Virus record (IMG/VR): IMGVR_UViG_3300020810_001156
Location: 1 to 64,000 of that record
Length of the DNA stretch: 64,000 bases
Direction: 5' to 3' (one strand)
In this document: piece after piece, positions 20,180 to 33,928 of the stretch
How positions within the stretch are numbered: position 1 is the stretch's first letter
Layout of the letters: the number at the start of each line of letters is the position of its first letter
The notes under the pieces: model-generated
Seen by the model: only the letters and a program-made list of their open reading frames with translations
Told to the model about the DNA's origin: nothing
Database searches by the model: none
Made by a program: the position numbers and the translations under genes

Positions 20180-22900
20180 TTAGAATCTATAAGTTAAACT
20201 TGCGTTCCAAGTTCTACCAAATCCGAACCATACTGAGTTTCTAACATCAACACCATTCCATGTAGTTGAACTAGCATCTGCATGAATGTTAGAGTTAGAT
20301 TCTGCAATATAAACAGCATCGAATAAGTTGTTGATATTAGCTCTCGCAGTAAATTTACCAAACTTACCAGTCAATCCTAAATCAACTAAACCATACGATG
20401 GTAATTTCATCGCACCTAAGTTATCAGGTTGTGTAAACTCCGAATCAGTAATAGAGTAGTCAGCGTATAATCCATCTACAAATCTATAATCTACATCAAC
20501 ATTAAATCTTTTACCTAACTTCTGGTCTACTCCTAAAACAGCTACGAATTGTGCAGCATCACCAACTTTAGCATCTTTAAGGTAAAGAGTACCTGTTCCG
20601 ATTGATTGTTGGTTATCATCAAATAATTCTGCTTCGAAATCTTTAGTATATCTCCAATCACCGATTGATAACATACCTCTGAATCTCGTTGCGTTTGATA
20701 ATTGATACTTACCTTCAAATTCGATACCATTATGTACTACATCGATATCTCTGAATTGTGCAAATCCATCTACACCTTGTTGGTTAGATAAACTTCTACT
20801 AACAAATCTATTACCCCAAGTTGTTGTGTAAGCGTTAATGTTAAACGATACATCTGAACCAATAAAACCATAACCCAATTCAAATGAACGAATTTCTTCG
20901 TTTTGTAAATCTGGATTAATTTCATTAGCAAAGTTAGGGAATACTGCATCAAACTGAGGTTGTCTTGAAATTACACCTGCGTTAAAGAACACATTTGATT
21001 TCTCATCGATATTGTAGTTAGCACCACCCTTTACATATCCACCACCTTGGTTTTGAACATCTGATTCTGGGTTACCTGGTTGGTCAAAATAATCGATTCT
21101 TTGGAATGCTTGGTTAGATAAACCTGCTTGTACTACTGCAGTTAATTTATCTCCCTGATATTCTACTAAACCATTAAGACCTTGCCATCCAACTTTACCA
21201 ACATTGTAGTAATCAATCTTCGGACCGTTTAGACCTGTATTCTGAAAAGGATTTGCTTCAACTAAAGTATTGATGATTTGACCGTTAGAGTTTTTGTTAC
21301 CCGTTGAGTAATAACCATCTAATCCCATTAAATCATTAAGAACTCTATAATGATAACCAGTATAGCTTCTTAAATCAACACCAATAGATGTTTTGAATTT
21401 ACCAAATTGTCCTTCTAAGTTTGAGATACCACCAACCCAGTTGTGTGAGTTCATAGATGCTCTTCTTACCAATACTGTTCTATTTACATTAGAATCTCTG
21501 AATCCATTCGAACCAATAAGTTGTCCTTGGAATGCTGAGATATCACCTGTATATCCTTCAGTAGTTGATTGGTTAGCTGCAACGATTGCATCGAAATCGA
21601 TGAATCCATTTGCATCTCTTGAACCTCTACCATTTTCTAAGTAGTGTTCTGTAAGGTCTTTTCTGAAAGGTAAGATATCAGTTGCAGCTGCACGATAGTT
21701 GTTACCACGAGGACCTGTACCACCACCTCTACCAGCAGAACCATATAATGATGTTGCTAATTTAAGGTTATCTGAAATGTTCCAATCCCAGTTGAAAGTT
21801 GCTAATGGTTTGTTGTAGAAGTTTCTTCTTAAAGAATACTCTTCTCCATTTAGTGTACCACCATTAGAATTCCATCTCTGGTCAATTCCTTCTTCACCAA
21901 AGTTTTGGTAATCTCTAATAGATACCCAAACATCTCTTTGATGGTGCCATTGACCTGCACCTAAGAATGAAAAGTTCAATTCATGGTCTGAACCTTCCGG
22001 TGCGTAACCAACTGCAGCGAAGTAAGTCCATCCTTCACCTGAAGTGTTGTAAACATATCCGTTACCAGCCCACTTAGATAATAAGAAAGATGATGCCCAT
22101 CCTTTATCATTCTTACCTGTGTTGTAAGAAACTCCTGTTTTGGTGTATCCATCGTTACCAACCATTTGAATTACTTTACCACCTTCAGTTTTCTGTGCGG
22201 CTTTAGTAAAAATGGAAACAGTTCCCCCAACTGAAGGAACTGCCAACTTAGATGCACCTAAACCTCTTTGGATTTGGATACCTGATGCTACATCGGTTAA
22301 ACCTTGCCAGTTACTCCAATATACCCATCCGTTCTCCATATCGTTAACGGGTTGTCCGTTAATAAGGAAAGATGTATTTCTTTGGTCAAATCCTCTAAGA
22401 GAGATTCTTGAATCACCATAACCACCACCTTGTTTAGTAGCATAAACCCCTGGAGTTTTATTCATAATTTCAGGGAATTCTTGGTTACCAACCTTTAGAG
22501 AAATCTCAGCTGGTGATATCGATGATACCGCTACTGGAGTTTCTCTTACTTTTGCTACATCAATTACCCCTGATGTAACCACCACTTCAGCTAACTGATT
22601 TAATGCAGTTGGTAAATTTACAATCATATCGTTCACAGCAACAACCTCAGTTGTTTGGAAACCAATAAAAGAAATTACTAAAGTGTTACCAGCGGATGCC
22701 CCAGAAATAGAAAAGAGACCATCAAAATCGGTTGTTGTACCATTTTGGGTCCCTTTGATTACTACCGTTGCGCCTGGTAGGGGTTCATTCGTTTCTGCAT
22801 CTACCACTGTTCCAGTGATTTGTGCGAAACCGGTCATTGAGGTGAAAACCATCAATAACCCAATCAAAAATTGCTTCATAATTGCTTGATTTTTGTTCAT
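20180..22900 (-). CDS. TonB-dependent outer-membrane receptor
   Basis: Signal peptide (FAQ), CarboxypepD-like domain (ITGTVVD..EPLPGATV), plug (SLRGF...INGQP), barrel ending ...SLTYRF. Confidence 0.9.
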   Translation of the reverse strand: MNKNQAIMKQFLIGLLMVFTSMTGFAQITGTVVDAETNEPLPGATVVIKGTQNGTTTDFDGLFSISGASAGNTLVISFIGFQTTEVVAVNDMIVNLPTALNQLAEVVVTSGVIDVAKVRETPVAVSSISPAEISLKVGNQEFPEIMNKTPGVYATKQGGGYGDSRISLRGFDQRNTSFLINGQPVNDMENGWVYWSNWQGLTDVASGIQIQRGLGASKLAVPSVGGTVSIFTKAAQKTEGGKVIQMVGNDGYTKTGVSYNTGKNDKGWASSFLLSKWAGNGYVYNTSGEGWTYFAAVGYAPEGSDHELNFSFLGAGQWHHQRDVWVSIRDYQNFGEEGIDQRWNSNGGTLNGEEYSLRRNFYNKPLATFNWDWNISDNLKLATSLYGSAGRGGGTGPRGNNYRAAATDILPFRKDLTEHYLENGRGSRDANGFIDFDAIVAANQSTTEGYTGDISAFQGQLIGSNGFRDSNVNRTVLVRRASMNSHNWVGGISNLEGQFGKFKTSIGVDLRSYTGYHYRVLNDLMGLDGYYSTGNKNSNGQIINTLVEANPFQNTGLNGPKIDYYNVGKVGWQGLNGLVEYQGDKLTAVVQAGLSNQAFQRIDYFDQPGNPESDVQNQGGGYVKGGANYNIDEKSNVFFNAGVISRQPQFDAVFPNFANEINPDLQNEEIRSFELGYGFIGSDVSFNINAYTTTWGNRFVSRSLSNQQGVDGFAQFRDIDVVHNGIEFEGKYQLSNATRFRGMLSIGDWRYTKDFEAELFDDNQQSIGTGTLYLKDAKVGDAAQFVAVLGVDQKLGKRFNVDVDYRFVDGLYADYSITDSEFTQPDNLGAMKLPSYGLVDLGLTGKFGKFTARANINNLFDAVYIAESNSNIHADASSTTWNGVDVRNSVWFGFGRTWNASLTYRF

Positions 22901-23149: not shown

Positions 23150-24529
23150 ATGTTAACATTACGAAATAATCAAATAGAACCTGTTAGAAAGGGTATTGAA
23201 TATTTTTCTGAAAATAAACCCGTTCCATCAATTATCGTAGCACCTACTGCTTTCGGTAAATCAATTGTTATTGCTCATATAGCAAAAGGTGTGGGAGAGA
23301 AGGTACTTGTTATTCAACCATCAAAAGAATTATTAGAACAAAACTATGAGAAGTTTACTAACTTAGGTGGTGAAGCAACTATCTATTCCGCTTCAATGGG
23401 TGAAAAAGAGATTGGTGATGTAACATATGCTACTATTGGTTCTATTGTTAATATAGCATATAAATTCAAAGAGTATGGAATATCTAAAGTAATCATCGAT
23501 GAGTGCGATAGGTTTCCCAGAGAACCAAATGGAATGTTAAGAAGATTCTTAAAGGGAGCTGGTATCATCCATACTTTAGGTCTAACTGCTACCCCTCTCA
23601 AACTTCAAACCAATATGGGTGAAGATGGTAAACCTTTCTCTAAGTTGGTTATGTTAACTAATCGTTCTAAGAAAGGTAACTTCTTTAAAAAGATTATTCA
23701 TGTTGCCCAAATTCAACAAATGGTTGAATCAAAGTTTTGGAGTAGATTAGAATATCAATCCTATGATTTCAATACTGGTGATTTGGTTTACAATACAACT
23801 GGTGCTGAGTATTCTAATTCATCTATAAAAAGAGCATATAAGAATCAAAAGATATCTTCTAAGATTGTAAAGAAGGTTGAAGAACTATACAATAGAAAAT
23901 CAATCTTAATAGCAGTTCCTTCAATCGATGAGGCTAAAGAATTAACTACAATGATTCCAAGTTGTAAAGCAGTTTACTCTGATATGCCAACTTCGGAAAG
24001 AAAAGAGATTATTGAAGATTTCAAAGCTGGTAGGTTAAGATGCATCGCTCAAGTTAATATCTTATCAGTTGGATTTGATTATCCAGAATTAGATTGTATC
24101 ATAACTGGTAGACCTACTGCTTCTTTGAGTTGGTGGTATCAATTTGTTGGTAGAGTTACTCGTATCCATCCAAACAAATCAGAAGGATTGGTTGTAGATT
24201 TCGTAGGAGCAGTTCCAAAGTTTGGAAAGGTTGAAGATATCTACTTCAAAGAAGATAAGGGAAGGTGGAGTATGTATGGTGAAGGAAAGAAACTACTAAC
24301 AGGTATCCCTATAAAAGAGATTGGTTTGCATATAGAAGGTGAACCATCACCATATGAAAAAGCCGCTGCATCACCATCAGTTAAGATGCCGTTTGGTAAA
24401 TATGCTGGTAGAGAGGTTAGAGAGATTCCTGCTCATTATAGAGAGTGGATGTTGACCAATTTTAATTGGACTCCATTTAACCAAAAGATTAAGGATGAAA
24501 TTCTAAGACTAAAATCTATTGGTATTTAA
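23150..24529 (+). CDS. SF2 DEAD/DEAH-like helicase (RadD/UvsW-like) with C-terminal DUF3820-like domain
   Basis: APTAFGKS, IIDECD, GLTATP, LSVGFD, QFVGRVTR; tail MPFGKY.G. Confidence 0.9.
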   Translation: MLTLRNNQIEPVRKGIEYFSENKPVPSIIVAPTAFGKSIVIAHIAKGVGEKVLVIQPSKELLEQNYEKFTNLGGEATIYSASMGEKEIGDVTYATIGSIVNIAYKFKEYGISKVIIDECDRFPREPNGMLRRFLKGAGIIHTLGLTATPLKLQTNMGEDGKPFSKLVMLTNRSKKGNFFKKIIHVAQIQQMVESKFWSRLEYQSYDFNTGDLVYNTTGAEYSNSSIKRAYKNQKISSKIVKKVEELYNRKSILIAVPSIDEAKELTTMIPSCKAVYSDMPTSERKEIIEDFKAGRLRCIAQVNILSVGFDYPELDCIITGRPTASLSWWYQFVGRVTRIHPNKSEGLVVDFVGAVPKFGKVEDIYFKEDKGRWSMYGEGKKLLTGIPIKEIGLHIEGEPSPYEKAAASPSVKMPFGKYAGREVREIPAHYREWMLTNFNWTPFNQKIKDEILRLKSIGI

Positions 24530-24547: not shown

Positions 24548-24695
24548 ACAAATACTCATTGTATAGTATCTAATACTCAACGAGTATAATCGTTATCTCA
24601 ATTAAGTTTATCGGAGGGTTCTCCTCTGGTGTTTTATAAATCGTTTTATTATTAAGTTATACAATTGGTTACTTTAACTATAAAGTAGGCATTTT

Positions 24696-25175
24696 ATGTA
24701 TGCGTTAAGATTTTTAGGAATTGTTTTATTCTTAATATTGGGTGTATCAAGTATATCCGCACAAGAAATAAAGGTAGGAGATGTTACAAACGAAATCCGA
24801 TTAGGACCTTTCGCTGGTAATGCAAATCTTGCTATGGGAGTTCGTAATATTACCGAAGAACTTCTTATGGATTTGGATTACGATTTATCCCCATACGCAG
24901 AAACACAAATTAATATAAGACTTGTATTCTTTGATGTAAAGAATATTGGTAAGAGTATTGGTGTATATCATAATAAGGTATCAGCAACTCAAATCATTGC
25001 AATAGGAGAATTACAAGTTGGTAAGAAAGTAAAGAAACGAGTTACTAAAAAAGGAGTGAGTAAAGAAATATCTAACTCCACTTTGGTGGTAGCATCAGAT
25101 GGTTCGTTTAATCAACAAACGGCATCAAGTGCTGTAAAAAAGGTTTTAGTAGAAATAATTAAAGATTTATTATGA
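24696..25175 (+). CDS. exported CsgG/TolB-N-like alpha/beta protein
   Basis: Signal peptide (SAQ); LAMGVRNITEELL helix and terminal S.AVKK.L helix resemble the CsgG fold. Confidence 0.5.
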   Translation: MYALRFLGIVLFLILGVSSISAQEIKVGDVTNEIRLGPFAGNANLAMGVRNITEELLMDLDYDLSPYAETQINIRLVFFDVKNIGKSIGVYHNKVSATQIIAIGELQVGKKVKKRVTKKGVSKEISNSTLVVASDGSFNQQTASSAVKKVLVEIIKDLL

Positions 25176-26848
25176 AAAAAATTTTAACATTATTAGTTAG
25201 TGTATTGTGTACACTAAGTGTCTTTGGACAATCTCGTATGGATTATTCGAGAGTAAATACAGTAACCCAAGTAGGGGATACTTTAATTGTAAAATATCAA
25301 TACTTTAAAGGAACTGATGTTAATGGTAATGATATGCCAGATGCGACACTTTATCAGTTTGATATACAACATAACAATAAGTTATTGGATGTTATTGAAA
25401 ATGATTGGCAACCAACATCTAACTCTTCACAAAAAGCAGTAAACACTTGGAATGGATATAAGTTTACTATTGATTCTGAAAAAGACCAAACTGATTTTGA
25501 TGGGCAATATCTAAGTTGGTTAAGTGGAGATGCTACCTATGGAACAAATGCTGATTGGTCAGTACAAAGGGTAACTTATCAAGATGTAACTTCATTGGAA
25601 AATGGTGATGAGATTATGAAGGTATCTTATAAGATTAAAGATAAGGCAAATTCAAACTATACTGATTATACTAATTTAATCAATGTGAATTGGGCAAACT
25701 ATAAAGAAGCAGATGGTACTCAGATTGATGTAACTGGTCAATCTAATATAGGGTTAACAGGTATTCAAGGTGGTGATGCTGGTAATGTTTCTATTTCAGT
25801 ATCATCGAATGTAATCACAAATAATATTGGTGATGGTGGTGATTTCTCTTATACAATTTATAACAAAGGTGAAAATACTAATCCAATAGCAAGTGGTAAC
25901 TTTGATGCTGCTGGTGATGCAACTGTAACTGGTTTGGAAAATGATGTTGAGTATGATTTATATGTTTCAATTGATTCATCTAAAGAGTATTTAGATAATG
26001 TAGTAACTGTATCTGATTTATCATTGGTGTTTGCAGAAGCAATAGGAGCAGGCGATTCTCCAAATGGTATTTCAACTACATTTGATTATTACATTCAAAG
26101 TATTTTAGCGAATGTTGTAGGTACTTCTATTCCAAATGGTGGTGATATAAACTTTGATGATTCGTATGAGATACTTGCTTATCTACAAGGTGTAACATCT
26201 ACCAATACAACATTCATTTCAAAAACAGGTGAAGTGTATAATGTAAGTGGTATCAAATCTACTTTTGGTGATGAAGTAAATGGTATAGCAACCGTTTCAC
26301 CAACATTCAAACCAACTGATAGTGATAAATCGTTCCAATTTGCTCATGCAATTTCTGGTGATGTAAACTTCTCACATGGATTTGAACCAACATCAACTAA
26401 TGCGGATATACCAACCTCAGCACAATCAACTACTACTCAAAGAAGTATGATGGCAAGGGGTGCAAAACTTAATCCTGAAACTGCTAATTTAGATTTAACA
26501 TCTGAATTAAAAGATGGTCAAGTAATCTTCACAATAGGTTCGGAGGTTGAGGAAATGATTGGTGCTCAGTTTAACATTGTTTACGATAGAACGAGATTAG
26601 TATTAGATGATGTAATATTTGATACTGGTAATACAATGACCAACTTCTCAAATCACATTGAAGAAAATGGAAAAATAAATATAGGTTCTTTTGACCAAAA
26701 CTTTGAGGCAACTGTTAAGACAGGTACTCCTTATAAGTTAATCTTTACACCAACCGTACAGTTACAAAACACATCAGGTTTAATTACTTTCAAAGTTAAT
26801 GAAGGTGTTAAAGCAGATGGTACACAAATTAAATTTATAATGGAGTAA
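25172..26848 (+). CDS. exported cohesin- and dockerin-like domain protein
   Basis: Signal peptide (FGQ); cohesin-like N-terminus (YQFDIQHN..LL) and C-terminus (GAQFNIVYD); dockerin-like VTVSD and GDVNFSH segments. Confidence 0.6.
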   Translation: MKKILTLLVSVLCTLSVFGQSRMDYSRVNTVTQVGDTLIVKYQYFKGTDVNGNDMPDATLYQFDIQHNNKLLDVIENDWQPTSNSSQKAVNTWNGYKFTIDSEKDQTDFDGQYLSWLSGDATYGTNADWSVQRVTYQDVTSLENGDEIMKVSYKIKDKANSNYTDYTNLINVNWANYKEADGTQIDVTGQSNIGLTGIQGGDAGNVSISVSSNVITNNIGDGGDFSYTIYNKGENTNPIASGNFDAAGDATVTGLENDVEYDLYVSIDSSKEYLDNVVTVSDLSLVFAEAIGAGDSPNGISTTFDYYIQSILANVVGTSIPNGGDINFDDSYEILAYLQGVTSTNTTFISKTGEVYNVSGIKSTFGDEVNGIATVSPTFKPTDSDKSFQFAHAISGDVNFSHGFEPTSTNADIPTSAQSTTTQRSMMARGAKLNPETANLDLTSELKDGQVIFTIGSEVEEMIGAQFNIVYDRTRLVLDDVIFDTGNTMTNFSNHIEENGKINIGSFDQNFEATVKTGTPYKLIFTPTVQLQNTSGLITFKVNEGVKADGTQIKFIME

Positions 26849-26850
26849 AT

Positions 26851-27228
26851 ATGAAAAAAGTATTAGTATTATTATCTTTGGTTTTATTAATGGGATGTGT
26901 TAAGGATGAAATCCTTTCTCCTATTGATAATACAGTAGAGGTTCCTGAATCATTGGTTATTGGTGATTTACAAGGTATTAAAGTAGAATCAACAATCGTA
27001 ACCGATGAAGTTAAGATGAATATCAAACTTCCTTATACGGGAACTTATAGAGTTAAAATTAGAGATATAGGAAAAGAACTTATATCTCAAGAAAAGTTAC
27101 AAGCAAACGAAGGAGATAATATTCTTAAAGTATATGTTTCTTCTTTATCAAACGATGGTTATACTTTAGAGTTGACCGATGATAATCACGATATCATAGG
27201 TATAACTTCAATCGTAGTAAACAACTAA
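26851..27228 (+). CDS. lipoprotein consisting of a T9SS C-terminal sorting domain-like Ig fold
   Basis: Lipobox LMGC then VKDE; IRDIGKELI...GDN.LKV.VSSL..GYTLEL resembles type A CTD. Confidence 0.6.
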   Translation: MKKVLVLLSLVLLMGCVKDEILSPIDNTVEVPESLVIGDLQGIKVESTIVTDEVKMNIKLPYTGTYRVKIRDIGKELISQEKLQANEGDNILKVYVSSLSNDGYTLELTDDNHDIIGITSIVVNN

Positions 27229-27238
27229 ATATAAAATT

Positions 27239-27541
27239 ATGAGTGAAGAAAAAGAAGTAGGGTTCTTCGGACAATTGAAAAATCAAATCATAACTGGTGC
27301 AGGGGTTATCCTAACTGGTTTGGGTACAATGTTTATGGATGAAGTAAAAACATTCATTGGTATTGGAGATGAAGAAGAAACCAAAACAGAACAAGTTCAA
27401 GTTGAACAAAAGCAAGAGGTCAATGTAAGTGGACCTGAAATCATTATCAATATTCCTGAACAAAAAACAGAAACTAAAACAATTATTAAAGAAGTTCCTG
27501 TTAAAGAAAAGAAGGAAAAAGAAGAAGAAATAGATTGGTAA
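27239..27541 (+). CDS. membrane-anchored protein with charged low-complexity tail
   Basis: One TM segment; KTIIKEVPVKEKKEKEEE. Confidence 0.75.
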   Translation: MSEEKEVGFFGQLKNQIITGAGVILTGLGTMFMDEVKTFIGIGDEEETKTEQVQVEQKQEVNVSGPEIIINIPEQKTETKTIIKEVPVKEKKEKEEEIDW

Positions 27542-27570
27542 TAAGTTATATATTGTTAATATTAAATTAA

Positions 27571-27807
27571 ATGATTATGTTAAAATTCTTTAGAAATTTT
27601 TGGGAACTAAACACTATGCCGATGGTGGATATGTGGAATGATGCCGAAACTGTTAATGAAAAAATAGTAGCAGTATTTTTTAGCATTTGGATTGCTATAT
27701 TGTTGGTATTGTTTTATGTAGGAATGACGGGATTATTATACGGATTAATATCAGGAGAAGCAGATGTAGCAAATGCAACATTTGGTATCTTTGATTATTG
27801 TTGTTAA
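27571..27807 (+). CDS. small membrane protein
   Basis: Long hydrophobic segment. Confidence 0.65.
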   Translation: MIMLKFFRNFWELNTMPMVDMWNDAETVNEKIVAVFFSIWIAILLVLFYVGMTGLLYGLISGEADVANATFGIFDYCC

Positions 27808-28008
27808 TTATGAAAAAAATAATTGATATATTGAGTAAGATTGATAGTTGGGTATATAATCAACTATTAAATTTATACCCTAATCTTACAAAACATATGA
27901 GGGAAAAATAATGGGATTATTAGATGTGTTTATAATAACATCTGCAATCGTTATAGGTATGTCCGTTGTAATCGGACAATTAATGAAAATATTTGATAAG
28001 GAAGAATA

Positions 28009-28725
28009 ATGAAAAAATTATTACTATTGTTGGTATGTGTATTTTTAACACAAACCACATTTGCGCAAGTTGGAAGTATTAAAGCAGAAGAATATGTTGC
28101 TGAATTCGAAAAGAAAAAATCAATTGATGATGTTTCGGATTATGATGGTGATATGTTGCCTGTTGCACTACTCGATGTAGGTATCTCAGATGCTCTCTAC
28201 GAAACTTATCCTGAATTAAGGGATGGTAGAGTGGGTTTAGGACTTACAAACATTGTAATCGAATATTTGGATTGGACAAATAGATTTGAATTTGTTGAAG
28301 AAAAATCTGCAATCAAAGATAGAATGAAATCACAATGGGTTGCTTCTCGTAAAGGTGTATCTGAAAATAAAGTTTATGGTATGGGTAAGATTACTCTTGC
28401 TGAATACTTTGTAACTATTGAGATATACGATTTCTCAGTATCGGAAGATGAAGTACTTTCACTTAAAGAAGGTTCTAAACAAACTCAAACAACTCGTTTA
28501 GGATTACAAGTAAGATTTACCGATGCTGAAACTGGTAGATACTTGGTAGGTTCTGGTTTAGGAGATGCTAAGACTGTTAAAACTCAAGAAGGTTTAATTG
28601 GTTTAGATGTAGATGAAATCGCATTTAGAGAATCAGGTATCGGAGTTGCAACTCGTAAAGCATTAGAAACAGCTTCAGCAAGAATTGTGGCAAGAATGAT
28701 ACGAAAAGGAATCTTCCCAAACTAA
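28009..28725 (+). CDS. csgG: CsgG-family (curli assembly/transport) protein
   Basis: Signal peptide; RFEFVEEK, AEYFVTIEIYDF, LGLQVRFTDAETG...GSG.G, G.ATRKALETA motifs. Confidence 0.7.
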   Translation: MKKLLLLLVCVFLTQTTFAQVGSIKAEEYVAEFEKKKSIDDVSDYDGDMLPVALLDVGISDALYETYPELRDGRVGLGLTNIVIEYLDWTNRFEFVEEKSAIKDRMKSQWVASRKGVSENKVYGMGKITLAEYFVTIEIYDFSVSEDEVLSLKEGSKQTQTTRLGLQVRFTDAETGRYLVGSGLGDAKTVKTQEGLIGLDVDEIAFRESGIGVATRKALETASARIVARMIRKGIFPN

Positions 28726-28728
28726 TGG

Positions 28729-30339
28729 ATGAAAAAACTACTATCGATACTATTTTTTATATTCGTAACACAAGTTAGTTACGGACAGACATTTACACAA
28801 ACCTTTGTAGATAGATGTACTGGTGAAGTACAAGTAGTAACTGCCAACTTTCAAACGGGTTCGGCAGTTGTTTCATTTTATAATAAAGTTAGAGTATTTA
28901 CATATCAAGAATATGTAAACGGAGAATTACACCAATGGTTGATGACTACTTATGCTTGGTGGCAAGCACTCTCCCCATGTTCAGCTGCACAAACTCAAAC
29001 TACCAACGCACAAAACGCAGCGAATAACGCCACAAATAACACTACAAACACAACCAATACAAATACCTCATCAACTAGCAACACATCTTCATCAAGTAGT
29101 AGTTCATCATCAAGTTCGTCTGGAGGGGATTCTGGTAGTTCATCTTCAAGTTCGTCAGGTGGTTCAGACGGTGGTGGTGATGGAAGTAGTTCATCAGGTG
29201 GTTCAGAAGGTAGTGGAGAAGGTAGTGGAGAAGGTAGTGGAGAAGGTTCTGGCGAAGGAAGTGGAGAAGGTAGTGGAGAAGGTAGTGGAGAAGGTGAAGG
29301 TTCTGGTGAAGGTTCCGGTGAAGGTGAAGGTGAAGGAGAAGGTAGTGGAGAGGGTGAAGGTGAAGGAGAAGGTTCTGGTGAAGGAGAAGGAGAAGGTTCT
29401 GGTGAAGGTGAAGGAGAAGGTGAAGAAGAGTCATCTGAAGAAAGTTCAGAGGAAGAATCAAGTGAAGAGGAATCATCAGAAGAATCGGAAGAAGAAAGTT
29501 CAGAAGAAGAATCCGAAGAAGAGAGTGAGGAGGAATCAGAAGAAGAAGAGAGTGAAGAAGAATCTGAGGAAGATGAGGAAGAATCTGATGAGGATGATGA
29601 AGAAGAATCCGAAGAAAGTGATGGTGAAGATGAAGAAGATGAGGAAGATGAAAAGGAAAAAAAGTTTATGCCTATTCAATTAAAGGCGGATATGATGGCT
29701 CAACAAGCTCTTACTTTGGATTATAATGCGGTTCTTAATATCGGTGCTTCTATGAGTTCTATTTTTGGTGATAGAAGTTATGGTGCTAATCTTATGATAT
29801 ATGATAATCTTAAACAAGCAAACATTTCACTTAACACATCAGGTGTTACTATGAATGATAATTACGAAGTAACATGGGTAGATGGTGTTTCGGTTTCTTA
29901 TATGAGAAACTATAAGATGAATGCTATATCAGCATCAGCAAGTAGAATGAAACCATTAGGTAAGTGGGGAACTGTTGGTGTGGGTATTAACTATTCTTAT
30001 ATGACGGGTAAAGACCAATTAGGGCAACAACTTCCTAAGTCTTGGATGTTAGGATATAATGTTGTTTATTCTAATATGATAAAAATAACTGATAGAATAA
30101 TGTATTCACCAGCATTGGTTGGAGTTAGTTCTCCATTATCATATACACAAATGCAAGAAACTGATATTGTAGATTTTTCTACAATCAATAAAGATTTAAT
30201 GGTTATAGTAGCAAACCCATTCACAATACAATTAACTAATAGATTTTCGTTCAATGTAGGGTGGACAGTTATAATGAGTACGAGTGAATATCTACCGATA
30301 TTAAACTCGTTTATGATAGGTTCTAAAATACCATTTTAA
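28729..30339 (+). CDS. exported protein: small N-domain, long S/G/E low-complexity stalk, C-terminal beta-barrel-like domain
   Basis: Signal peptide (YGQ); GSGE and EEES repeats; alternating beta strands ending in Phe. Confidence 0.8.
29206..29660 (+). repeat. coding low-complexity repeats (GSGE / GEGE / EEES)
   Basis: Tandem GAAGGTAGTGGA-type and GAAGAA-rich units. Confidence 0.9.
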
Positions 30340-30341
30340 TT

Positions 30342-30890
30342 ATGAATAAAAAAATAGAAATTTCTGTATGGTTACTTTGTTTATTAGTAATCGGATTTTG
30401 GTTTATTGGATATACTACACAATACCAAAGACCAGCTAAAATAGAATATGTAGAAGTAGTAAAAGAAGTAGAAGTAGTTGTTACTGATACAATCTATGTA
30501 GATAAAATCATAGAAGAAAAAATATATGTACCAAAATACATTACACAAATCGAAAGAGATACAATTAAAGTAGAAGTACCAGTAGAAGTAATTGTTGAAA
30601 AACAAATACCAATTACTAAAAAAGTATATGTGGATAAAGTAGTAGATAGACTTGTTGAAGTTCCCGTCAACGAGAAAAAACTATTTTTAGGGTTTGGTTA
30701 TCAATACGATTTTGAAAATTATTTTAGTGGAGCAAATATAAAGTTAATTCACAAAACACCTAAAGATAAAATGTTTAGTTTAGATGTTGGTTTCAGAAAT
30801 GATTTGTTAGATAAAGAAACTAATGTAGGAAGATTAAGACCTTACATTGGAGGTTCTATATATTTTAGAATTGATAATCCAAACAAATAG
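30342..30890 (+). CDS. membrane-anchored protein with V/E/K-rich repeats and C-terminal beta strands
   Basis: TM helix; KVEVPVEVIVEK and VDRLVEVPV repeats. Confidence 0.75.
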   Translation: MNKKIEISVWLLCLLVIGFWFIGYTTQYQRPAKIEYVEVVKEVEVVVTDTIYVDKIIEEKIYVPKYITQIERDTIKVEVPVEVIVEKQIPITKKVYVDKVVDRLVEVPVNEKKLFLGFGYQYDFENYFSGANIKLIHKTPKDKMFSLDVGFRNDLLDKETNVGRLRPYIGGSIYFRIDNPNK

Positions 30891-32920
30891 TGAAAAAACT
30901 TCTTTACATATTATTATTTTTACCCACTTTAGTTTTTGGACAAAGTGGTGAAGGATATGTAAATTACAAATCCTATAAAACTCACTATGGGAATGGTTAT
31001 AGTTCAACCTATAATGGATACACATATAGTGGATTAGCTGATAACGCAACCGAGTTACAAGCAATGTTAGATGTAAATCACCCTGGTACATCTTTAACAC
31101 ATGAAGGTGAAGCAGTAGCTAATTCAAGTGAAGGATTAAAAGGAGGTAGACCTTCCAGATGGGGGAATGATTTTTATGCCGTTTATCACTATGGTTGGTT
31201 TCAACCACAAGAAACAGGAACTTACAGATTTACCCTACAATCAGATGATGGTAGTGGTTTATGGATAGATGGAGACTTAAAACTATTTAGACCTTGTTGT
31301 GGTGCATCCTCTGTGGATGTTTCCTTAACATCAGGACAATGGTACTTCTTTGAAACAAAATGGCAAGAATATACAGGTGGTGATTATATGTACTTTATGT
31401 ACTCACCTCCAAGTAATGCTAATGTGTTTTATGTTGGTGACCAAACACAGTATCTTAAAGTAACTAATATAGAACCAGAAGAAGAACCAATAAGTCCTGA
31501 AGTAGATTTAGATTTAGAATTCCATTCTCAATTAGCACCAGAAGAATATAGATTCAGAGTTTACTATGATGGAACTTCTGCACAAGATGGAACTGAATGG
31601 TTGAATACATCTACAATGAACTCTTCTTATTATTTAGATGATGATGGTAGTAAGGATATTACTGATTATCTAAATTTAGTCAAAATGGCAGATGGTAAGA
31701 AGGCAACTACAACTGGTGGTTGGACGGAGTGGTGTGTGGTTTATGATTATGATACAACTAACAAACGATACAGGGTTGGTATTGATAAAAGAGAATTTCC
31801 AAGTGGATTTACTTTTACTGATTTGAAACAATTAAAGTTGTTTGATTTATGGGATGGTGAAATAACTTATATGTCAGATGATATCTATTGGGCAAATTAT
31901 TACATCTATACTGATACTCAATTTGATTTCACAAGTTCAACCTTTTCATCTTATATAAGAGATGCAAATGGATTCTATGGAATAAAAGCAGATTTCTCAT
32001 TTGAAGATGTTGAAATATACAAAGGACATAAAGTATCATTTATGAATCCATCTACCAATATAGAAGGATGGACAGCAGAAGAATTTATGGATGATTATAT
32101 TACAGTTGCAGATGTAGTTGCAGGATTTAACGAATTAGCTGGTGGTGGAATTAATGGTGGATTAAAAGGAGATTTGAATGGAGTCCAATTACAAAACTCA
32201 GATGTTAACCAAGATGGTGAATTTGATTTTCAAGATAGTCAAATAGGATTATCTTTTTTGACTGGTGGTGATACTCCGTTTGATGGAAGTTTATATGATA
32301 TAATGAGAATAGTTCCTAAATCAGAATATGATAATACTACAACTACTAATTGGAAAACACAAACAAATAAATCACCATCAACATCGTTTACGTTTAGTCT
32401 TATAGATACGATACAAACTTTAGAGTATAAGGTTTCTTTTATAGGTGATGTAAACCTTTCACATTCTGCTCCCCAAACAGGTACTTCACCCGCTACCCAA
32501 TCTACTATATCTTCAAGAATGATGAGTGTAAGAAATTCATCTACTCAAAACAATACTTCGTTAGAGGTTGATTTAGATATTGAAAAAACTGAAGAACATA
32601 TAATCATTACATTAGATTTGCCTGAGAATAATTTTAATCTAATTGGTTCTGAATTTAGAATTGGGTTTGATAATGAACGAGTAGAATATGATAAGTTAGA
32701 AACTAATACAATGATGAATAGCTTTGATGCTAAGAGGAGTTCTTATGTTAAGGTGGGTTCTATATCAACTGATGGTTCTCTAACCTTAAACAGCGGCGTT
32801 CAATATAAAATTTATTTTAAACCAATACAATCATTTGAATCAACATTAGGATTGGTATCGGTTAAGAAATCAGAAGTTGTTGATGTAAATGCTAATATAA
32901 TAAATGTAATTATAAAATGA
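30890..32920 (+). CDS. exported PA14-domain protein with dockerin- and cohesin-like domains
   Basis: Signal peptide (FGQ); GWFQPQETGTYRFTLQSDDGS.LWIDG (PA14); DVNQDGEFDFQD; GDVNLSH; C-terminal cohesin-like domain. Confidence 0.75.
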   Translation: MKKLLYILLFLPTLVFGQSGEGYVNYKSYKTHYGNGYSSTYNGYTYSGLADNATELQAMLDVNHPGTSLTHEGEAVANSSEGLKGGRPSRWGNDFYAVYHYGWFQPQETGTYRFTLQSDDGSGLWIDGDLKLFRPCCGASSVDVSLTSGQWYFFETKWQEYTGGDYMYFMYSPPSNANVFYVGDQTQYLKVTNIEPEEEPISPEVDLDLEFHSQLAPEEYRFRVYYDGTSAQDGTEWLNTSTMNSSYYLDDDGSKDITDYLNLVKMADGKKATTTGGWTEWCVVYDYDTTNKRYRVGIDKREFPSGFTFTDLKQLKLFDLWDGEITYMSDDIYWANYYIYTDTQFDFTSSTFSSYIRDANGFYGIKADFSFEDVEIYKGHKVSFMNPSTNIEGWTAEEFMDDYITVADVVAGFNELAGGGINGGLKGDLNGVQLQNSDVNQDGEFDFQDSQIGLSFLTGGDTPFDGSLYDIMRIVPKSEYDNTTTTNWKTQTNKSPSTSFTFSLIDTIQTLEYKVSFIGDVNLSHSAPQTGTSPATQSTISSRMMSVRNSSTQNNTSLEVDLDIEKTEEHIIITLDLPENNFNLIGSEFRIGFDNERVEYDKLETNTMMNSFDAKRSSYVKVGSISTDGSLTLNSGVQYKIYFKPIQSFESTLGLVSVKKSEVVDVNANIINVIIK

Positions 32921-33258
32921 GAAAGATATTATTATTTATATTATTAATTTTGGTATCTTGTCAACCTGATGAGTTAATGGTTGTTGAACCATATCCACAA
33001 TACGAAATGATATTTGAGGAATCAATATCTAAAGTGGTTGATGGACAAGAGTTCTCATTTGAGGTATCAACAACTGAAGAATATACGTTGATTATATCAC
33101 ACCAAAATAGTTCAGTAATATCAAAAGAATCATTCATGCCAACAATGGGATTGAATACTAAAATCCTTTATACAAAATCTTTACCTAAAGGAGAATTAAA
33201 CTTAATATTAATTTTATCTAAAGAAGAAATCCAAAAAACTACTATTATTATAGAATAA
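32917..33258 (+). CDS. lipoprotein with T9SS CTD-like Ig fold (paralog of 26851)
   Basis: Lipobox LVSC then QPDE; similar strand pattern ending KTTIIIE. Confidence 0.55.
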   Translation: MRKILLFILLILVSCQPDELMVVEPYPQYEMIFEESISKVVDGQEFSFEVSTTEEYTLIISHQNSSVISKESFMPTMGLNTKILYTKSLPKGELNLILILSKEEIQKTTIIIE

Positions 33259-33271: not shown

Positions 33272-33928
33272 ATGTTAGTATATGATTTCAAAAATGTGGG
33301 AAAGATTTATGGATTGACCAATAATGATTCGGTTGAACCAAAACATGCTGACCGTATTGCTGAAATTCCTAAATCTATTTTTTCTGGGTTTAAGTATGAG
33401 AGGTATAAAAATATGCCTCCATATAAAAACGAATCTATGAGAACAATGCAGGAATTAATTAGATTATCACAAATACCATCTAATGATGAATTTACTTTGA
33501 AGATGGATAAAGTGAAAGAATCTTTTAAAAATTTATGTGAAGAATTAGATATTGATTTCCCAAAAGAAATGGTAAAAGATTTAAAAGATGCTGCTAGTGG
33601 TGTGATATTAGATTTAAAATATCACTACAATAGACCGAGGCCTTACAAATTAGCACCTTTACTTAATATAGAATTAGATACTAACGAAATCGAAGATACA
33701 ACATCAGATTCACCATCTTATCCTTCTGGACACGCAGCTCAAGGTATTCTGATATCCAATTATTTAGCTTACAAAAATCCTTTACATAGAGGAAAGATTT
33801 TGAGGTTAGGTAGAGATATAGCAAAGAGTAGAGTTACTGCAAAAGTTCACTATCAATCGGATGTAGATTTTGGTTCAATGATTGGAAACGATATGTTCAA
33901 CTATTTAAAAGAAAACAAATTAATATAA
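33272..33928 (+). CDS. PAP2-superfamily phosphatase/haloperoxidase-like protein
   Basis: KYHYNRPRP, PSYPSGHA and SRV.AKVHY.SD motifs. Confidence 0.9.
   Translation: MLVYDFKNVGKIYGLTNNDSVEPKHADRIAEIPKSIFSGFKYERYKNMPPYKNESMRTMQELIRLSQIPSNDEFTLKMDKVKESFKNLCEELDIDFPKEMVKDLKDAASGVILDLKYHYNRPRPYKLAPLLNIELDTNEIEDTTSDSPSYPSGHAAQGILISNYLAYKNPLHRGKILRLGRDIAKSRVTAKVHYQSDVDFGSMIGNDMFNYLKENKLI

What the first reader, a model, noticed from the sequence alone, without database searches (positions are those of the whole stretch)
24696..33258. Phage-encoded cell-surface assembly system: CsgG pore-like proteins, cohesin/dockerin scaffolds, lectin and beta-barrel
Seen: one co-directional cluster of about 12 genes, nearly all with signal peptides, lipoboxes or TM anchors. 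It includes two CsgG-like proteins, two cohesin+dockerin scaffolds (one with PA14), two CTD-like lipoproteins, a barrel with a polyacidic stalk and two VEK-rich anchored proteins. No CsgA/CsgB curlin repeats are present. Established: CsgG is a secretion pore, cohesin-dockerin pairs self-assemble, and PA14 binds glycans. Inference: the phage builds a non-curli surface appendage or coat on the infected cell, for adhesion to particles, aggregation with new hosts, or superinfection/grazer shielding. This is the best candidate for an undescribed system.
Basis: partly seen in the sequence, partly recalled or inferred. Interest (0 to 1): 0.85.

Follow-up and report, generated by a model that had tools for sequence, protein, structure and literature searches.

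The report
Phage-encoded host-envelope adhesin gene module
A large marine phage of Bacteroidota carries a conserved block of about twelve genes whose products are all addressed to the host cell envelope (a divergent CsgG-fold protein, an outer-membrane barrel on a long acidic linker, and sugar-binding cohesin/dockerin proteins with partner surface lipoproteins); it most likely re-dresses the surface of the infected cell and is a new, Bacteroidota-style counterpart of the curli-type modules already known from SAR11 phages.

Summary
Window 24696-33258 is one co-directional, tightly packed block in a Flavobacterium-phage-immuto-like myophage. All ten main products carry Sec signals, lipoboxes or membrane anchors.

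Confirmed with tools:
- g6 is a remote CsgG-family protein, and g1 is a short paralog.
- g2 and g9 end in cohesin modules and carry a dockerin-like EF-hand segment; g9 has PA14.
- g7 is a novel N-domain, a 228-residue linker (net charge -82) and a 12-strand outer-membrane barrel.
- g3 and g10 are lipoproteins with the Bacteroidetes surface-export signal.

The CTD-like fold of g3/g10 stays weak.

In 45 dereplicated viral loci, g4, g6, g7, g1 and a cohesin protein always co-occur. Cohesin proteins either carry a type IX secretion C-terminal sorting domain (T9SS CTD) with no lipoprotein nearby, or lack it and are matched 1:1 by a lipoprotein.

Envelope and surface targeting is strong. A CsgG secretion pore is doubtful, because g6 has no lipid anchor and polar hairpins. 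Function is untested.

Phage-encoded curli (type VIII secretion, T8SS) modules are already described in pelagiphages, so I rate this a new variant of a known kind.

The parts
24609..24631 (+). Terminator-like hairpin between the upstream helicase gene and g1; marks the start of a separate transcription unit
   Evidence: 10-bp stem, T-run; sequence
24696..25175 (+). g1, 159 aa, secreted (signal peptidase I site ISA|QE), short paralog of the CsgG/LptE/LpoB fold clan
   Evidence: Atlas TM 0.67-0.74 to CsgG/LptE/FlgT clusters; hhalign to g6 family E 2.9e-4; jackhmmer converges on g6 family; present in 37/37 loci
25172..26848 (+). g2, 558 aa, secreted multidomain protein: unassigned N-terminal half, degenerate dockerin-like segment (25979-26206), Ser/Thr linker, C-terminal cohesin module (26486-26845)
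   Evidence: a cohesin protein lies upstream of the CsgG-like gene in 42/42 loci
26851..27228 (+). g3, 125 aa lipoprotein (LLMGC|VKDE) with Bacteroidetes lipoprotein export signal; beta-rich domain weakly CTD/DUF3244-like; partner of g2
   Evidence: LES consensus from PMC5080379; 1:1 rule with CTD-less cohesin proteins
27239..27541 (+). g4, 100 aa, bitopic inner-membrane protein: short acidic N-terminus, Gly-rich TM helix (res 17-33), E/K/V/P-rich extended tail ending EEEIDW
   Evidence: directly upstream of the CsgG-like gene in 42/42 loci
27571..27807 (+). g5, 78 aa, small membrane protein (hydrophobic stretch res 28-61); variable accessory gene
27810..27911 (+). mini-ORF, 33 aa, conserved just upstream of the CsgG-like gene in six related loci
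27911..28009 (+). mini-ORF, 32 aa, one hydrophobic helix, found only in this contig
28009..28725 (+). g6, 238 aa, secreted non-lipidated CsgG-family protein (signal TFA|QV); conserved YPEL-D-RVG-G loop at the position of the CsgG constriction loop; polar hairpins
28729..30339 (+). g7, 536 aa: signal (YG|QT); novel N-domain with invariant Cys pair (res 21-90, 28789-28998); disordered Asn/Thr, then Ser/Gly, then Glu-rich linker (res 91-318, 28999-29682, net -82, tandem-repeat DNA 29196-29652); 12-strand outer-membrane beta-barrel ending ...GSKIPF (29731-30336)
   Evidence: directly downstream of the CsgG-like gene in 40/40 loci
30342..30890 (+). g8, 182 aa: N-terminal membrane anchor, V/E/K-rich beta-prone spacer, about 70-aa aromatic-rich C-terminal region; accessory gene
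30890..32920 (+). g9, 676 aa, paralog of g2: PA14 lectin-type domain (about 31142-31474), dockerin-like segment with canonical Ca loop (32075-32287), C-terminal cohesin (32558-32917)
32917..33258 (+). g10, 113 aa lipoprotein (ILVSC|QPDE), paralog of g3, start overlaps g9 stop by 4 nt; partner of g9

Best explanation
This is an operon-like accessory module of a large marine Bacteroidota (Flavobacteriales-type) myophage. During infection it puts at least ten phage proteins into the host cell envelope and so re-dresses the cell surface.

Shown:
- All products have Sec, lipoprotein or membrane-anchor signals of Bacteroidota type.
- An invariant core always travels together. It consists of g4 (inner-membrane anchored with an extended tail), g6 and its short paralog g1 (secreted, non-lipidated CsgG-fold proteins), and g7 (novel disulfide-type N-domain, a long disordered linker, and a 12-strand outer-membrane barrel).
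- A variable shell of glycan-binding cohesin/dockerin proteins (PA14 here; C-type lectin or LCCL in relatives) accompanies the core.
- These shell proteins either carry a T9SS sorting domain or, as here, are matched one-to-one by a small lipoprotein that bears the surface-export signal.

Inferred:
- g3 and g10 take over the anchoring/export role of the T9SS domain and hold g2 and g9 on the cell surface.
- The core forms an envelope-spanning platform: periplasmic CsgG-fold rings under the g7 barrel, tethered to the inner membrane by g4. This platform anchors or services the surface layer rather than acting as a classical lipidated CsgG pore.
- The pay-off is attachment of the infected cell to glycan-rich particles or neighbouring cells, i.e. 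adhesion or 'sibling capture', as proposed for pelagiphage curli modules.
For: - Signals and lipoboxes. The lipoprotein export signal K-(D/E)2 / Q-A-(D/E)2 comes from PMC5080379.
- CsgG family and fold of g6. g1 as paralog.
- Barrel.
- Cohesin, dockerin-like and PA14.
- T9SS CTD on orthologous cohesin proteins: immuto gp015 has Cohesin 5.9e-9 plus Por_Secre_tail 2.4e-8; Tara loci; 26 dereplicated loci.
- Co-occurrence in 45 dereplicated loci: g4 42/42, cohesin protein 42/42, g7 40/40, g1 37/37. The count of CTD-less cohesin proteins equals the count of lipoproteins (1:1 in 10 loci, 2:2 in 8), and there are 0 lipoproteins in the 26 loci with CTD-bearing cohesin proteins.
- Position among replication and nucleotide-metabolism genes, about 20 kb from the baseplate gene.
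- No close g6 relative in 185,579 species genomes.
- Precedent for phage-borne CsgG-centred adhesion modules: PMC7029224, PMC9599517.
Against: - No expression, localisation or phenotype data exist.
- g6 lacks the lipid anchor and the amphipathic hairpins of pore-forming CsgG, so the role of the core is a guess.
- How CTD-less g2 and g9 cross the outer membrane is unknown; they could stay periplasmic.
- The widely spaced invariant Cys pair in the g7 N-domain argues against autotransporter-type export, so the acidic 'stalk' may be periplasmic rather than on the surface.
- The dockerin-like segment has one canonical loop at most, and no cohesin partner has been identified.
- Melnitz-infected cultures showed no clumping (PMC9004378), which weakens the aggregation idea for the analogous system.
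- 100% conservation of the core fits an essential step (for example lysis) as well as an accessory one.
Confidence: 0.4

Rival explanations
1. Receptor masking or superinfection exclusion. The lectin/cohesin layer and the polyanionic g7 linker cover or bind the glycan or T9SS-dependent receptors used by this and competing phages. This blocks secondary adsorption to infected cells and stops progeny from being lost on debris.
For: - Phage-encoded envelope proteins of lytic phages classically do this (T5 Llp, T4 Imm/Sp; established knowledge).
- The genes sit in an early/middle-type neighbourhood.
- The adhesin genes are far more divergent (g2 32-55%, g9 35-67% identity) than the core (g6 78-96%) across the same loci, as expected for parts that track variable surface glycans.
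- The pelagimyophage literature also invokes surface change to avoid co-infection (PMC7029224).
Against: - Known exclusion systems are one or two genes, not ten.
- No PADLOC or PHROG match.
- The invariant CsgG-fold, barrel and g4 core has no obvious role in masking.
Confidence: 0.2
2. Lysis-timing or outer-membrane-breaching device. The adjacent inner-membrane protein (g4), periplasmic ring proteins (g1, g6) and outer-membrane barrel (g7) act like a spanin or gated secretin, as proposed for CsgGF of phage Melnitz.
For: - The g4-g6-g7 adjacency is invariant, which fits an essential function.
- An inner-membrane plus outer-membrane gene pair is the spanin hallmark (established knowledge).
- No spanin is annotated in phage immuto.
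- A lysis role was proposed for Melnitz CsgGF (PMC9004378).
- Small membrane proteins (g5 and the 32-aa ORF) lie in the block.
Against: - In phage immuto the annotated endolysin lies about 6 kb beyond the block; no endolysin gene was identified or sought in this window.
- g4's tail is low-complexity by composition rather than the coiled coil expected of an i-spanin; coiled-coil propensity was not computed.
- g7 is an integral barrel, not a lipoprotein o-spanin.
- Lectin, cohesin and T9SS-cargo proteins that always accompany the core are unnecessary for lysis.
Confidence: 0.1
3. Nutrient-capture auxiliary module. Surface glycan-binding proteins hand substrates to the neighbouring phage-encoded TonB-dependent transporter, like a stripped-down polysaccharide-utilisation locus.
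For: - A SusC-type TonB-dependent receptor lies 1.8 kb upstream and is conserved in several related contigs.
- PA14 and C-type lectin domains are present.
- The lipoproteins are predicted to be surface-exposed.
Against: - The receptor is on the opposite strand, behind a helicase gene.
- It is present in only 5 of 37 dereplicated loci.
- There is no SusD partner and no glycoside hydrolase.
- The hypothesis does not explain the core genes.
Confidence: 0.08
4. The proteins are virion components (decoration or fibre proteins) and the N-terminal hydrophobic stretches are not cleaved signals.
For: Ig-like, lectin and cohesin-type domains do occur on phage particles (established knowledge).
Against: - Five signal-peptidase-I type signals with the Bacteroidetes +1 Gln.
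- Invariant lipobox Cys in 12 of 12 g3/g10 homologs.
- An outer-membrane barrel with a C-terminal aromatic signal.
- A T9SS sorting domain on orthologs.
- Location outside the structural module.
- No PHROG structural hits.
Confidence: 0.02

Closest known systems
Phage-encoded curli / type VIII secretion modules of pelagimyophages, pelagipodophages and Methylophilales phage Melnitz (PMC7029224, PMC9004378, PMC9599517)
   Same: - Both are in marine phages.
- Both are multi-gene blocks of exported proteins centred on a CsgG-family gene.
- Both lie between the replication and structural modules.
- Function is unproven in both, with adhesion/aggregation ('sibling capture'), uptake or lysis timing proposed.
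- The g6 family profile aligns to Melnitz CsgG over 219 columns (hhalign E 1.3e-5).
   Different: - Melnitz CsgG is canonical (Pfam 1.2e-48, lipobox) and comes with CsgF, curlin-repeat proteins, FecR and a CHASE2 cyclase.
- Here Pfam does not see g6, which has no lipobox.
- There is no CsgF and no curlin repeats.
- The partners are a 12-strand barrel with a novel N-domain, a bitopic inner-membrane protein, cohesin/dockerin/lectin proteins and LES lipoproteins or T9SS cargo.
- tblastn finds no link between the two groups.
E. coli CsgG curli secretion channel (PDB 4uv3, 6l7a)
   Same: - Same fold; it is the best structural match.
- The profile match covers residues 4-195.
- A conserved Tyr-Pro sits at the constriction-loop position.
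   Different: - g6 has no lipid anchor in the phage clade.
- Its hairpin segments are charged (SEDEVLSLKEGSKQTQ) rather than amphipathic and aromatic (GGVGARYFGIGADTQYQL).
- There is no CsgE, CsgF, CsgA or CsgB.
Periplasmic ring-forming relatives of the same fold clan (PelC of the Pel exporter, FlgT/FlgP flagellar rings, LptE)
   Same: These are lower-ranked structural matches. Pairing a ring-type protein with an adjacent outer-membrane barrel resembles PelC-PelB and LptE-LptD (established knowledge).
   Different: - TM-scores are much lower than to CsgG (0.26-0.41 against about 0.54).
- Those proteins are lipoproteins or parts of other machines.
- There are no polysaccharide-synthesis genes here.
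Cellulosome-type cohesin-dockerin assemblies
   Same: - A cohesin module.
- A dockerin-type Ca-binding loop plus helix.
- Ser/Thr linkers.
- A surface-anchored design.
   Different: - No enzymes and no multi-cohesin scaffoldin.
- At most one canonical dockerin repeat.
- The cargo is lectin-type domains.
- It is phage-encoded in Bacteroidota.
- Anchoring is by T9SS CTD or LES lipoprotein rather than SLH or sortase.
12-strand outer-membrane barrels with N-terminal extensions: FapF amyloid exporter, type Va autotransporter beta-domains, NanC/KdgM porins
   Same: - Size and strand number.
- Foldseek TM 0.61 (NanC), 0.52-0.58 (FapF), 0.38-0.47 (autotransporters).
- The order N-domain, linker, barrel resembles FapF and autotransporters.
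   Different: - No sequence-family match in Pfam; close homologs of the barrel carry no barrel-family Pfam annotation.
- The N-domain is novel.
- The Cys pair 54 residues apart is atypical for autotransporter passengers.
Bacteroidota surface proteins exported by T9SS (CTD cargo) or by the lipoprotein export signal
   Same: - Orthologs carry PF18962.
- g3 and g10 carry C-x-K/Q-x-D/E motifs matching the LES described in PMC5080379.
- Gln at +1 of the signal-peptidase-I sites.
   Different: The genes are encoded by a lytic-type phage rather than by the cell. The apparent swap between a fused CTD and a separate lipoprotein partner was not found described in the literature searched.

Membership tests
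CsgG family (PF03783) | Sequence/profile similarity to CsgG | tested here: met
   g6 alone gets no Pfam hit. However, 15 of 36 homologs hit PF03783, best E 3.7e-23. The family profile hits E. coli CsgG at E 4.5e-4 and Melnitz CsgG by hhalign at E 1.3e-5.
CsgG family (PF03783) | CsgG fold | tested here: met
   AF2 pLDDT 80.6. The Foldseek top 20 hits are all CsgG, E 2e-7, TM 0.45-0.56.
CsgG curli secretion pore (T8SS) | N-terminal lipidation (lipobox Cys) for outer-membrane targeting | tested here: not met
   The window clade and its close viral relatives have signal-peptidase-I type signals ending in Q, some with no Cys at all. The more distant homologs that match Pfam CsgG mostly have G/A-C lipoboxes.
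CsgG curli secretion pore (T8SS) | Two amphipathic hairpins that build the 36-strand membrane barrel | tested here: inconclusive
   The model shows long strands 133-151 and 155-172. Their distal halves are charged or polar with no aromatic girdle, and the second hairpin is short and of low confidence.
CsgG curli secretion pore (T8SS) | Partner genes CsgF/CsgE and curlin-repeat substrates | tested here: not met
   No PF10614 or PF07012 hit at E <= 0.1 in any of the ten proteins. The Melnitz module has both.
CsgG curli secretion pore (T8SS) | Nonameric channel assembly | not testable with these tools
   No multimer prediction is available.
Cohesin (PF00963) | Cohesin-type module by sequence profile | tested here: met
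   The A3 profile's five PDB hits are all cohesins, best E 7.7e-5. Atlas neighbour clusters carry PF00963. Immuto gp015 hits PF00963 at 5.9e-9. g2 and g9 themselves are below Pfam detection.
Dockerin type I (PF00404) | Two tandem Ca-binding loop plus helix repeats | tested here: inconclusive
   The A6 profile's top 14 PDB hits are dockerins, E 4.1e-5, but only through the second repeat. g9 has one canonical loop, and the first repeat is degenerate. Both g2 repeats are degenerate. Pfam E is 0.0068 in one ortholog.
Cohesin-dockerin system | Specific cohesin-dockerin binding | not testable with these tools
   This needs complex prediction or biochemistry.
PA14 (PF07691) | Pfam match above the gathering score | tested here: met
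   g9 scores 25.5 bits against a cutoff of 24. Orthologs score 41 and 37.7 bits.
T9SS C-terminal sorting domain (PF18962) | CTD match in g3/g10 | tested here: inconclusive
   g3 scores 18 bits against a cutoff of 27. Only 1 of 12 family members hits. hhalign places g3 residues 54-111 on the CTD of immuto gp015 with P 0.003 and probability 10%.
Bacteroidota surface-exposed lipoproteins | Lipobox Cys followed by the acidic export signal K-(D/E)2 or Q-A-(D/E)2 | tested here: met
   Cys is invariant, and acidic residues fall within the four residues after it in all 12 homologs, with Asp near-invariant at Cys+3 (CVKDE, CQPDE, CMKDD ...). The consensus comes from PMC5080379. Actual surface exposure is not testable here.
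Outer-membrane beta-barrel proteins | Closed antiparallel barrel and a C-terminal hydrophobic/aromatic signal | tested here: met
   AF2 pLDDT 84.5 with about 12 strands. All top Foldseek hits are outer-membrane barrels. The C-terminus ...GSK(I/L)P(F/L/I) is conserved in 22 sequences.
Type Va autotransporters | Autotransporter beta-domain family match and an export-compatible passenger | tested here: not met
   No Pfam autotransporter hit. Structural TM is only 0.38-0.47. The N-domain has an invariant Cys pair 54 residues apart.
Two-component spanins | i-spanin with a coiled-coil periplasmic domain plus a lipoprotein o-spanin | tested here: not met
   g4's tail is low-complexity and E/K/V/P-rich. 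The outer-membrane partner is a barrel, not a lipoprotein. There is no PHROG lysis hit.
Sus-like polysaccharide utilisation locus | Adjacent SusC/SusD pair with glycan-degrading enzymes | tested here: not met
   A SusC-type receptor is present, but there is no SusD-like ORF beside it and no glycoside hydrolase domain in the cluster.

The most novel reading that the evidence does not exclude
The invariant quartet (g4, g1, g6, g7) is a previously unrecognised phage-built, envelope-spanning machine. It would consist of non-lipidated CsgG-fold rings docked under a dedicated 12-strand barrel and tethered to the inner membrane. This machine would export or anchor a phage-specified adhesin layer independently of the host's own secretion systems. 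The fused-CTD versus separate-lipoprotein alternation would then show phages switching between hijacking T9SS and bringing their own surface-display route. If so, phages would actively control the adhesion and aggregation behaviour of abundant marine Flavobacteriia.
Probability: 0.25. Interest if true: 0.85.

Novelty: new variant of a known kind. Interest (0 to 1): 0.66.

Why it matters
Marine Flavobacteriia are the main degraders of algal polysaccharide and live attached to particles. A widespread phage lineage carries this module: at least 518 IMG/VR contigs, and 3,533 homologs of g6 at E <= 0.001 in a 5.8-billion-protein collection. If the module changes what the infected cell sticks to, or which phages can reach it, then it bears on particle colonisation, carbon export and phage competition in the ocean.

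It also widens a puzzle so far confined to SAR11 and OM43 phages, namely why lytic phages carry CsgG-centred envelope modules. The cultured Flavobacterium phage vB_FspM_immuto and its host carry the core genes, so the question is directly testable.

The exact swap between a fused T9SS sorting domain and a separate export-signal lipoprotein is a natural experiment on how Bacteroidota place proteins on their surface.

Tried and rejected
- Direct family scans of the ten proteins returned only PA14 and low-complexity noise: Pfam, PHROGs, NCBIfam and PADLOC.
- Single-sequence PDB searches of g6 and g1 found nothing. The g1 family profile against PDB also found nothing.
- The g7 N-domain profile found nothing in Pfam or PDB.
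- Megablast of the block against GenBank phages gave no match. tblastn of g9 gave no match.
- A second cohesin in the N-terminal half of g2 was not detected by hhalign or by PDB profile search.
- hhalign of the g3 family against the 646-aa CTD protein of locus L012 was negative.
- Promoter scans were uninformative. Sigma-70-type sites were not enriched, and the Bacteroidetes -7 motif TAnnTTTG was only marginally enriched.
- A genome-collection scan with g6 found no cellular close relative.
- The first alignment-based viral scan failed for lack of conserved columns and was repeated with closer sequences.
- My HMMs found no CsgG-like gene in Pelagibacter phage Mosig.
- tblastn with a cellular CsgG-like homolog hit only immuto phages, so no sequence bridge to pelagiphage CsgG was obtained other than by profile.
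- I considered and rejected four readings: virion proteins, spanins, a PUL, and a canonical curli system. The reasons are in the membership table.

Full report
CONTEXT

The window is the first 64 kb of IMG/VR contig IMGVR_UViG_3300020810_001156, which is 252,603 bp. It is AT-rich (about 32% GC) and almost all genes are on the + strand. Its closest cultured relatives are the 160-kb Flavobacterium myophages vB_FspM_immuto.

The block 24696-33258 is flanked upstream by a helicase and downstream by a PAP2 phosphatase, a metallophosphoesterase and a dCMP deaminase. A baseplate-wedge gene lies at 55 kb. The cluster therefore sits in the replication and nucleotide-metabolism part of the genome, as its counterpart does in immuto.

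THE OBSERVATION

Ten ORFs (here g1-g10) and two mini-ORFs fill the interval with no real intergenic space. Several start/stop overlaps occur (g1/g2, g9/g10). The unit begins after a terminator-like hairpin.

The N-termini are read directly from the sequence:
- g1, g2, g6, g7 and g9 have signal-peptidase-I type signals, each followed by Gln. This pattern is typical of Bacteroidota by my own knowledge, and it is also seen in all g7 homologs.
- g3 and g10 have lipoboxes.
- g4, g5 and g8 each have a single hydrophobic anchor.

DOMAIN CHECKS

CsgG-like g6. Off-the-shelf scans see almost nothing, so I used family profiles and structure prediction.
- g6 has 3,533 homologs at E <= 0.001.
- Of 36 diverse homologs, 15 match Pfam CsgG, best E 3.7e-23.
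- The family profile finds E. coli CsgG at E 4.5e-4.
- An AF2 model (pLDDT 80.6) has CsgG as its 20 best PDB matches.

CsgG-like g1. This is a short paralog of the same clan.

Cohesin, dockerin-like and PA14.
- The C-terminal 120 residues of g2 and g9 are cohesin modules.
- A 70-residue internal segment is dockerin-like, with one canonical Ca loop in g9 only.
- g9 has PA14.
- The protein atlas independently places g2 among viral clusters that carry Cohesin, Dockerin_1, Por_Secre_tail, Lectin_C and LCCL.

Barrel protein g7.
- Its last 202 residues fold as a roughly 12-strand outer-membrane barrel (pLDDT 84.5). The nearest structures are NanC, FapF and autotransporter beta-domains.
- The conserved C-terminus is ...GSK(I/L)P(F/L/I).
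- Before the barrel lies a 228-residue linker (E74 S60 G48 D11, net charge -82) encoded by imperfect tandem repeats.
- Before the linker lies a 70-residue N-domain with an invariant D-P-C ... P-C cysteine pair. This domain matches nothing known.

Lipoproteins g3 and g10. They have an invariant Cys followed by acidic residues (CVKDE, CQPDE). This fits the lipoprotein export signal that sends Bacteroidetes lipoproteins to the cell surface (PMC5080379). Their 'CTD-like' fold is supported only by sub-threshold hits.

CONSERVATION

At least 518 IMG/VR contigs encode a g6 relative. I analysed the 80 best loci, which reduce to 45 after dereplication at 95% identity. Where flanks allow:
- a g4-type gene lies directly upstream in 42 of 42 loci;
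- a g7-type gene lies directly downstream in 40 of 40;
- a g1-type gene is present in 37 of 37;
- a cohesin protein lies upstream in 42 of 42;
- a lectin domain (PA14 or C-type) is present in 22 of 37;
- the TonB-dependent receptor is present in only 5 of 37.

Two layouts exist.
- Layout A (this window): g1, [dockerin-like + cohesin protein], lipoprotein, g4, (g5), CsgG-like, g7, (g8), ([lectin + dockerin-like + cohesin protein], lipoprotein).
- Layout B (immuto and Tara Oceans contigs): [cohesin + T9SS sorting-domain protein], g4, CsgG-like, g7, (C-type lectin protein), g1.

The number of cohesin proteins without a sorting domain always equals the number of g3/g10-type lipoproteins (1:1 in 10 loci, 2:2 in 8). 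The 26 loci with a sorting-domain cohesin protein have none. These loci are related, so the counts are not independent events. Even so, the rule has no exception, including one layout-A-like locus (L068) that carries the sorting domain and lacks the lipoprotein.

No close g6 relative was found in 185,579 species genomes. The more distant homologs recovered by phmmer mostly carry lipoprotein signals and include those that match Pfam CsgG; their genomic origin was not checked.

WHAT IT MOST LIKELY IS

The T9SS sorting domain on orthologs shows that the cohesin and lectin proteins are meant for the cell surface. The 1:1 alternation says that, in this phage, a surface-exported lipoprotein has taken over that role. 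Anchoring is the simplest reading.

The invariant core is harder to interpret. g6 has the CsgG fold and a highly conserved YPEL-D-RVG-G loop where CsgG has its constriction loop. However, the phage clade has no lipid anchor. The segments that form the membrane hairpins in E. coli CsgG are charged here (SEDEVLSLKEGSKQTQ against GGVGARYFGIGADTQYQL). I therefore do not file g6 as a curli-type pore.

A periplasmic ring under the adjacent g7 barrel, tethered by g4, is my preferred but unproven picture. Precedents for rings of this fold clan are PelC, FlgT/FlgP and LptE, which appear as lower hits.

The topology of the g7 N-domain and acidic linker (surface stalk or periplasmic spring) is unresolved. 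The widely spaced Cys pair argues against autotransporter-type export.

COMPARISON WITH WHAT IS KNOWN

Phage-encoded CsgG is not new. Pelagimyophages, pelagipodophages and phage Melnitz carry curli (T8SS) modules. Proposed roles are aggregation ('sibling capture'), uptake or lysis timing (PMC7029224, PMC9004378, PMC9599517).

I fetched the Melnitz module. Its CsgG is canonical (Pfam 1.2e-48, lipobox). It is accompanied by CsgF, curlin-repeat proteins, FecR and a CHASE2 cyclase. The g6 family aligns to it only at profile level (E 1.3e-5), and none of the partner genes is shared.

The present module is thus a distinct, Bacteroidota-adapted variant of a known kind: a CsgG-centred envelope module of marine phages. 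Its new content is cohesin/dockerin/lectin display proteins, T9SS or LES addressing, and a barrel protein with a novel N-domain. Seven literature searches found no description of it. Individual immuto genes are annotated as 'cohesin domain-containing' and 'lectin C-type', and one uncultured-phage protein is auto-named CsgG.

VERDICT

The rivals, with their tests, are listed separately: receptor masking, lysis device, nutrient capture and virion proteins.

Interest is moderately high. The module is abundant, strictly conserved and mechanistically opaque. It is testable in a cultured phage-host pair.

Noticed in passing
window 20180-22900 (- strand): The phage carries a 906-aa TonB-dependent receptor of SusC type (CarbopepD_reg_2 + Plug + barrel). 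It is 71-86% identical in related viral contigs. It is 65-76% identical to chromosomal genes of marine Flavobacteriales/Bacteroidota MAGs (for example a Polaribacter chromosome, 72%), which points to host-derived acquisition and to the likely host group. There is no SusD partner, and it is present in only 5 of 37 dereplicated loci.
   Followed up: partly
window 33272-33928 (+): A PAP2-family phosphatase with intact catalytic motifs but no signal peptide or membrane segment lies directly after the cluster. It follows the cluster in most layout-A loci. Whether it belongs functionally to the module (for example lipid or undecaprenyl phosphate chemistry) is unknown.
   Followed up: partly
window 27810-27911 and 27911-28009 (+): Two mini-ORFs fill the apparent gap before the CsgG-like gene. 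The 33-aa one is conserved (40-58% identity) at the same position in six related loci. The 32-aa one is a single hydrophobic helix seen only in this contig.
   Followed up: partly
window 29196-29652 (+): The acidic linker of g7 is encoded by imperfect 6-36-nt tandem repeats (GAAGGT, GAAGAAGAATC...). Linker length and composition vary widely between relatives (306-639 aa proteins; neutral Ser/Thr/Asn/Gly-rich in immuto), which suggests slippage-driven length variation.
   Followed up: partly
window 23150-24529 (+): The upstream superfamily-2 helicase has a C-terminal match to QSregVF_b ('quorum-sensing-regulated virulence factor', E 2.3e-6). This is an unusual appendage for a phage helicase.
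   Followed up: no
L180-L182 (Pelagibacter phage Mosig, MT647606.1): HMMs of the g6 family (including cellular CsgG-like members) found no CsgG-like gene in Mosig, and its record has no curli annotation. Melnitz (MZ577097) has an annotated CsgF-CsgG-curlin-FecR-cyclase block at 50.7-56.9 kb.
   Followed up: partly
L061, L069, L072, L085, L096, L097 (layout-B loci): Some layout-B loci carry an additional stand-alone 261-267-aa ORF that matches the g7 barrel profile, next to the full-length g7-type gene.
   Followed up: no
window, whole: No tRNA genes occur in the 64-kb window, whereas phage immuto has a tRNA cluster a few kb downstream of its version of the module. The parent contig (252.6 kb) is much larger than immuto (160 kb). 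Several related contigs are 250-290 kb.
   Followed up: no
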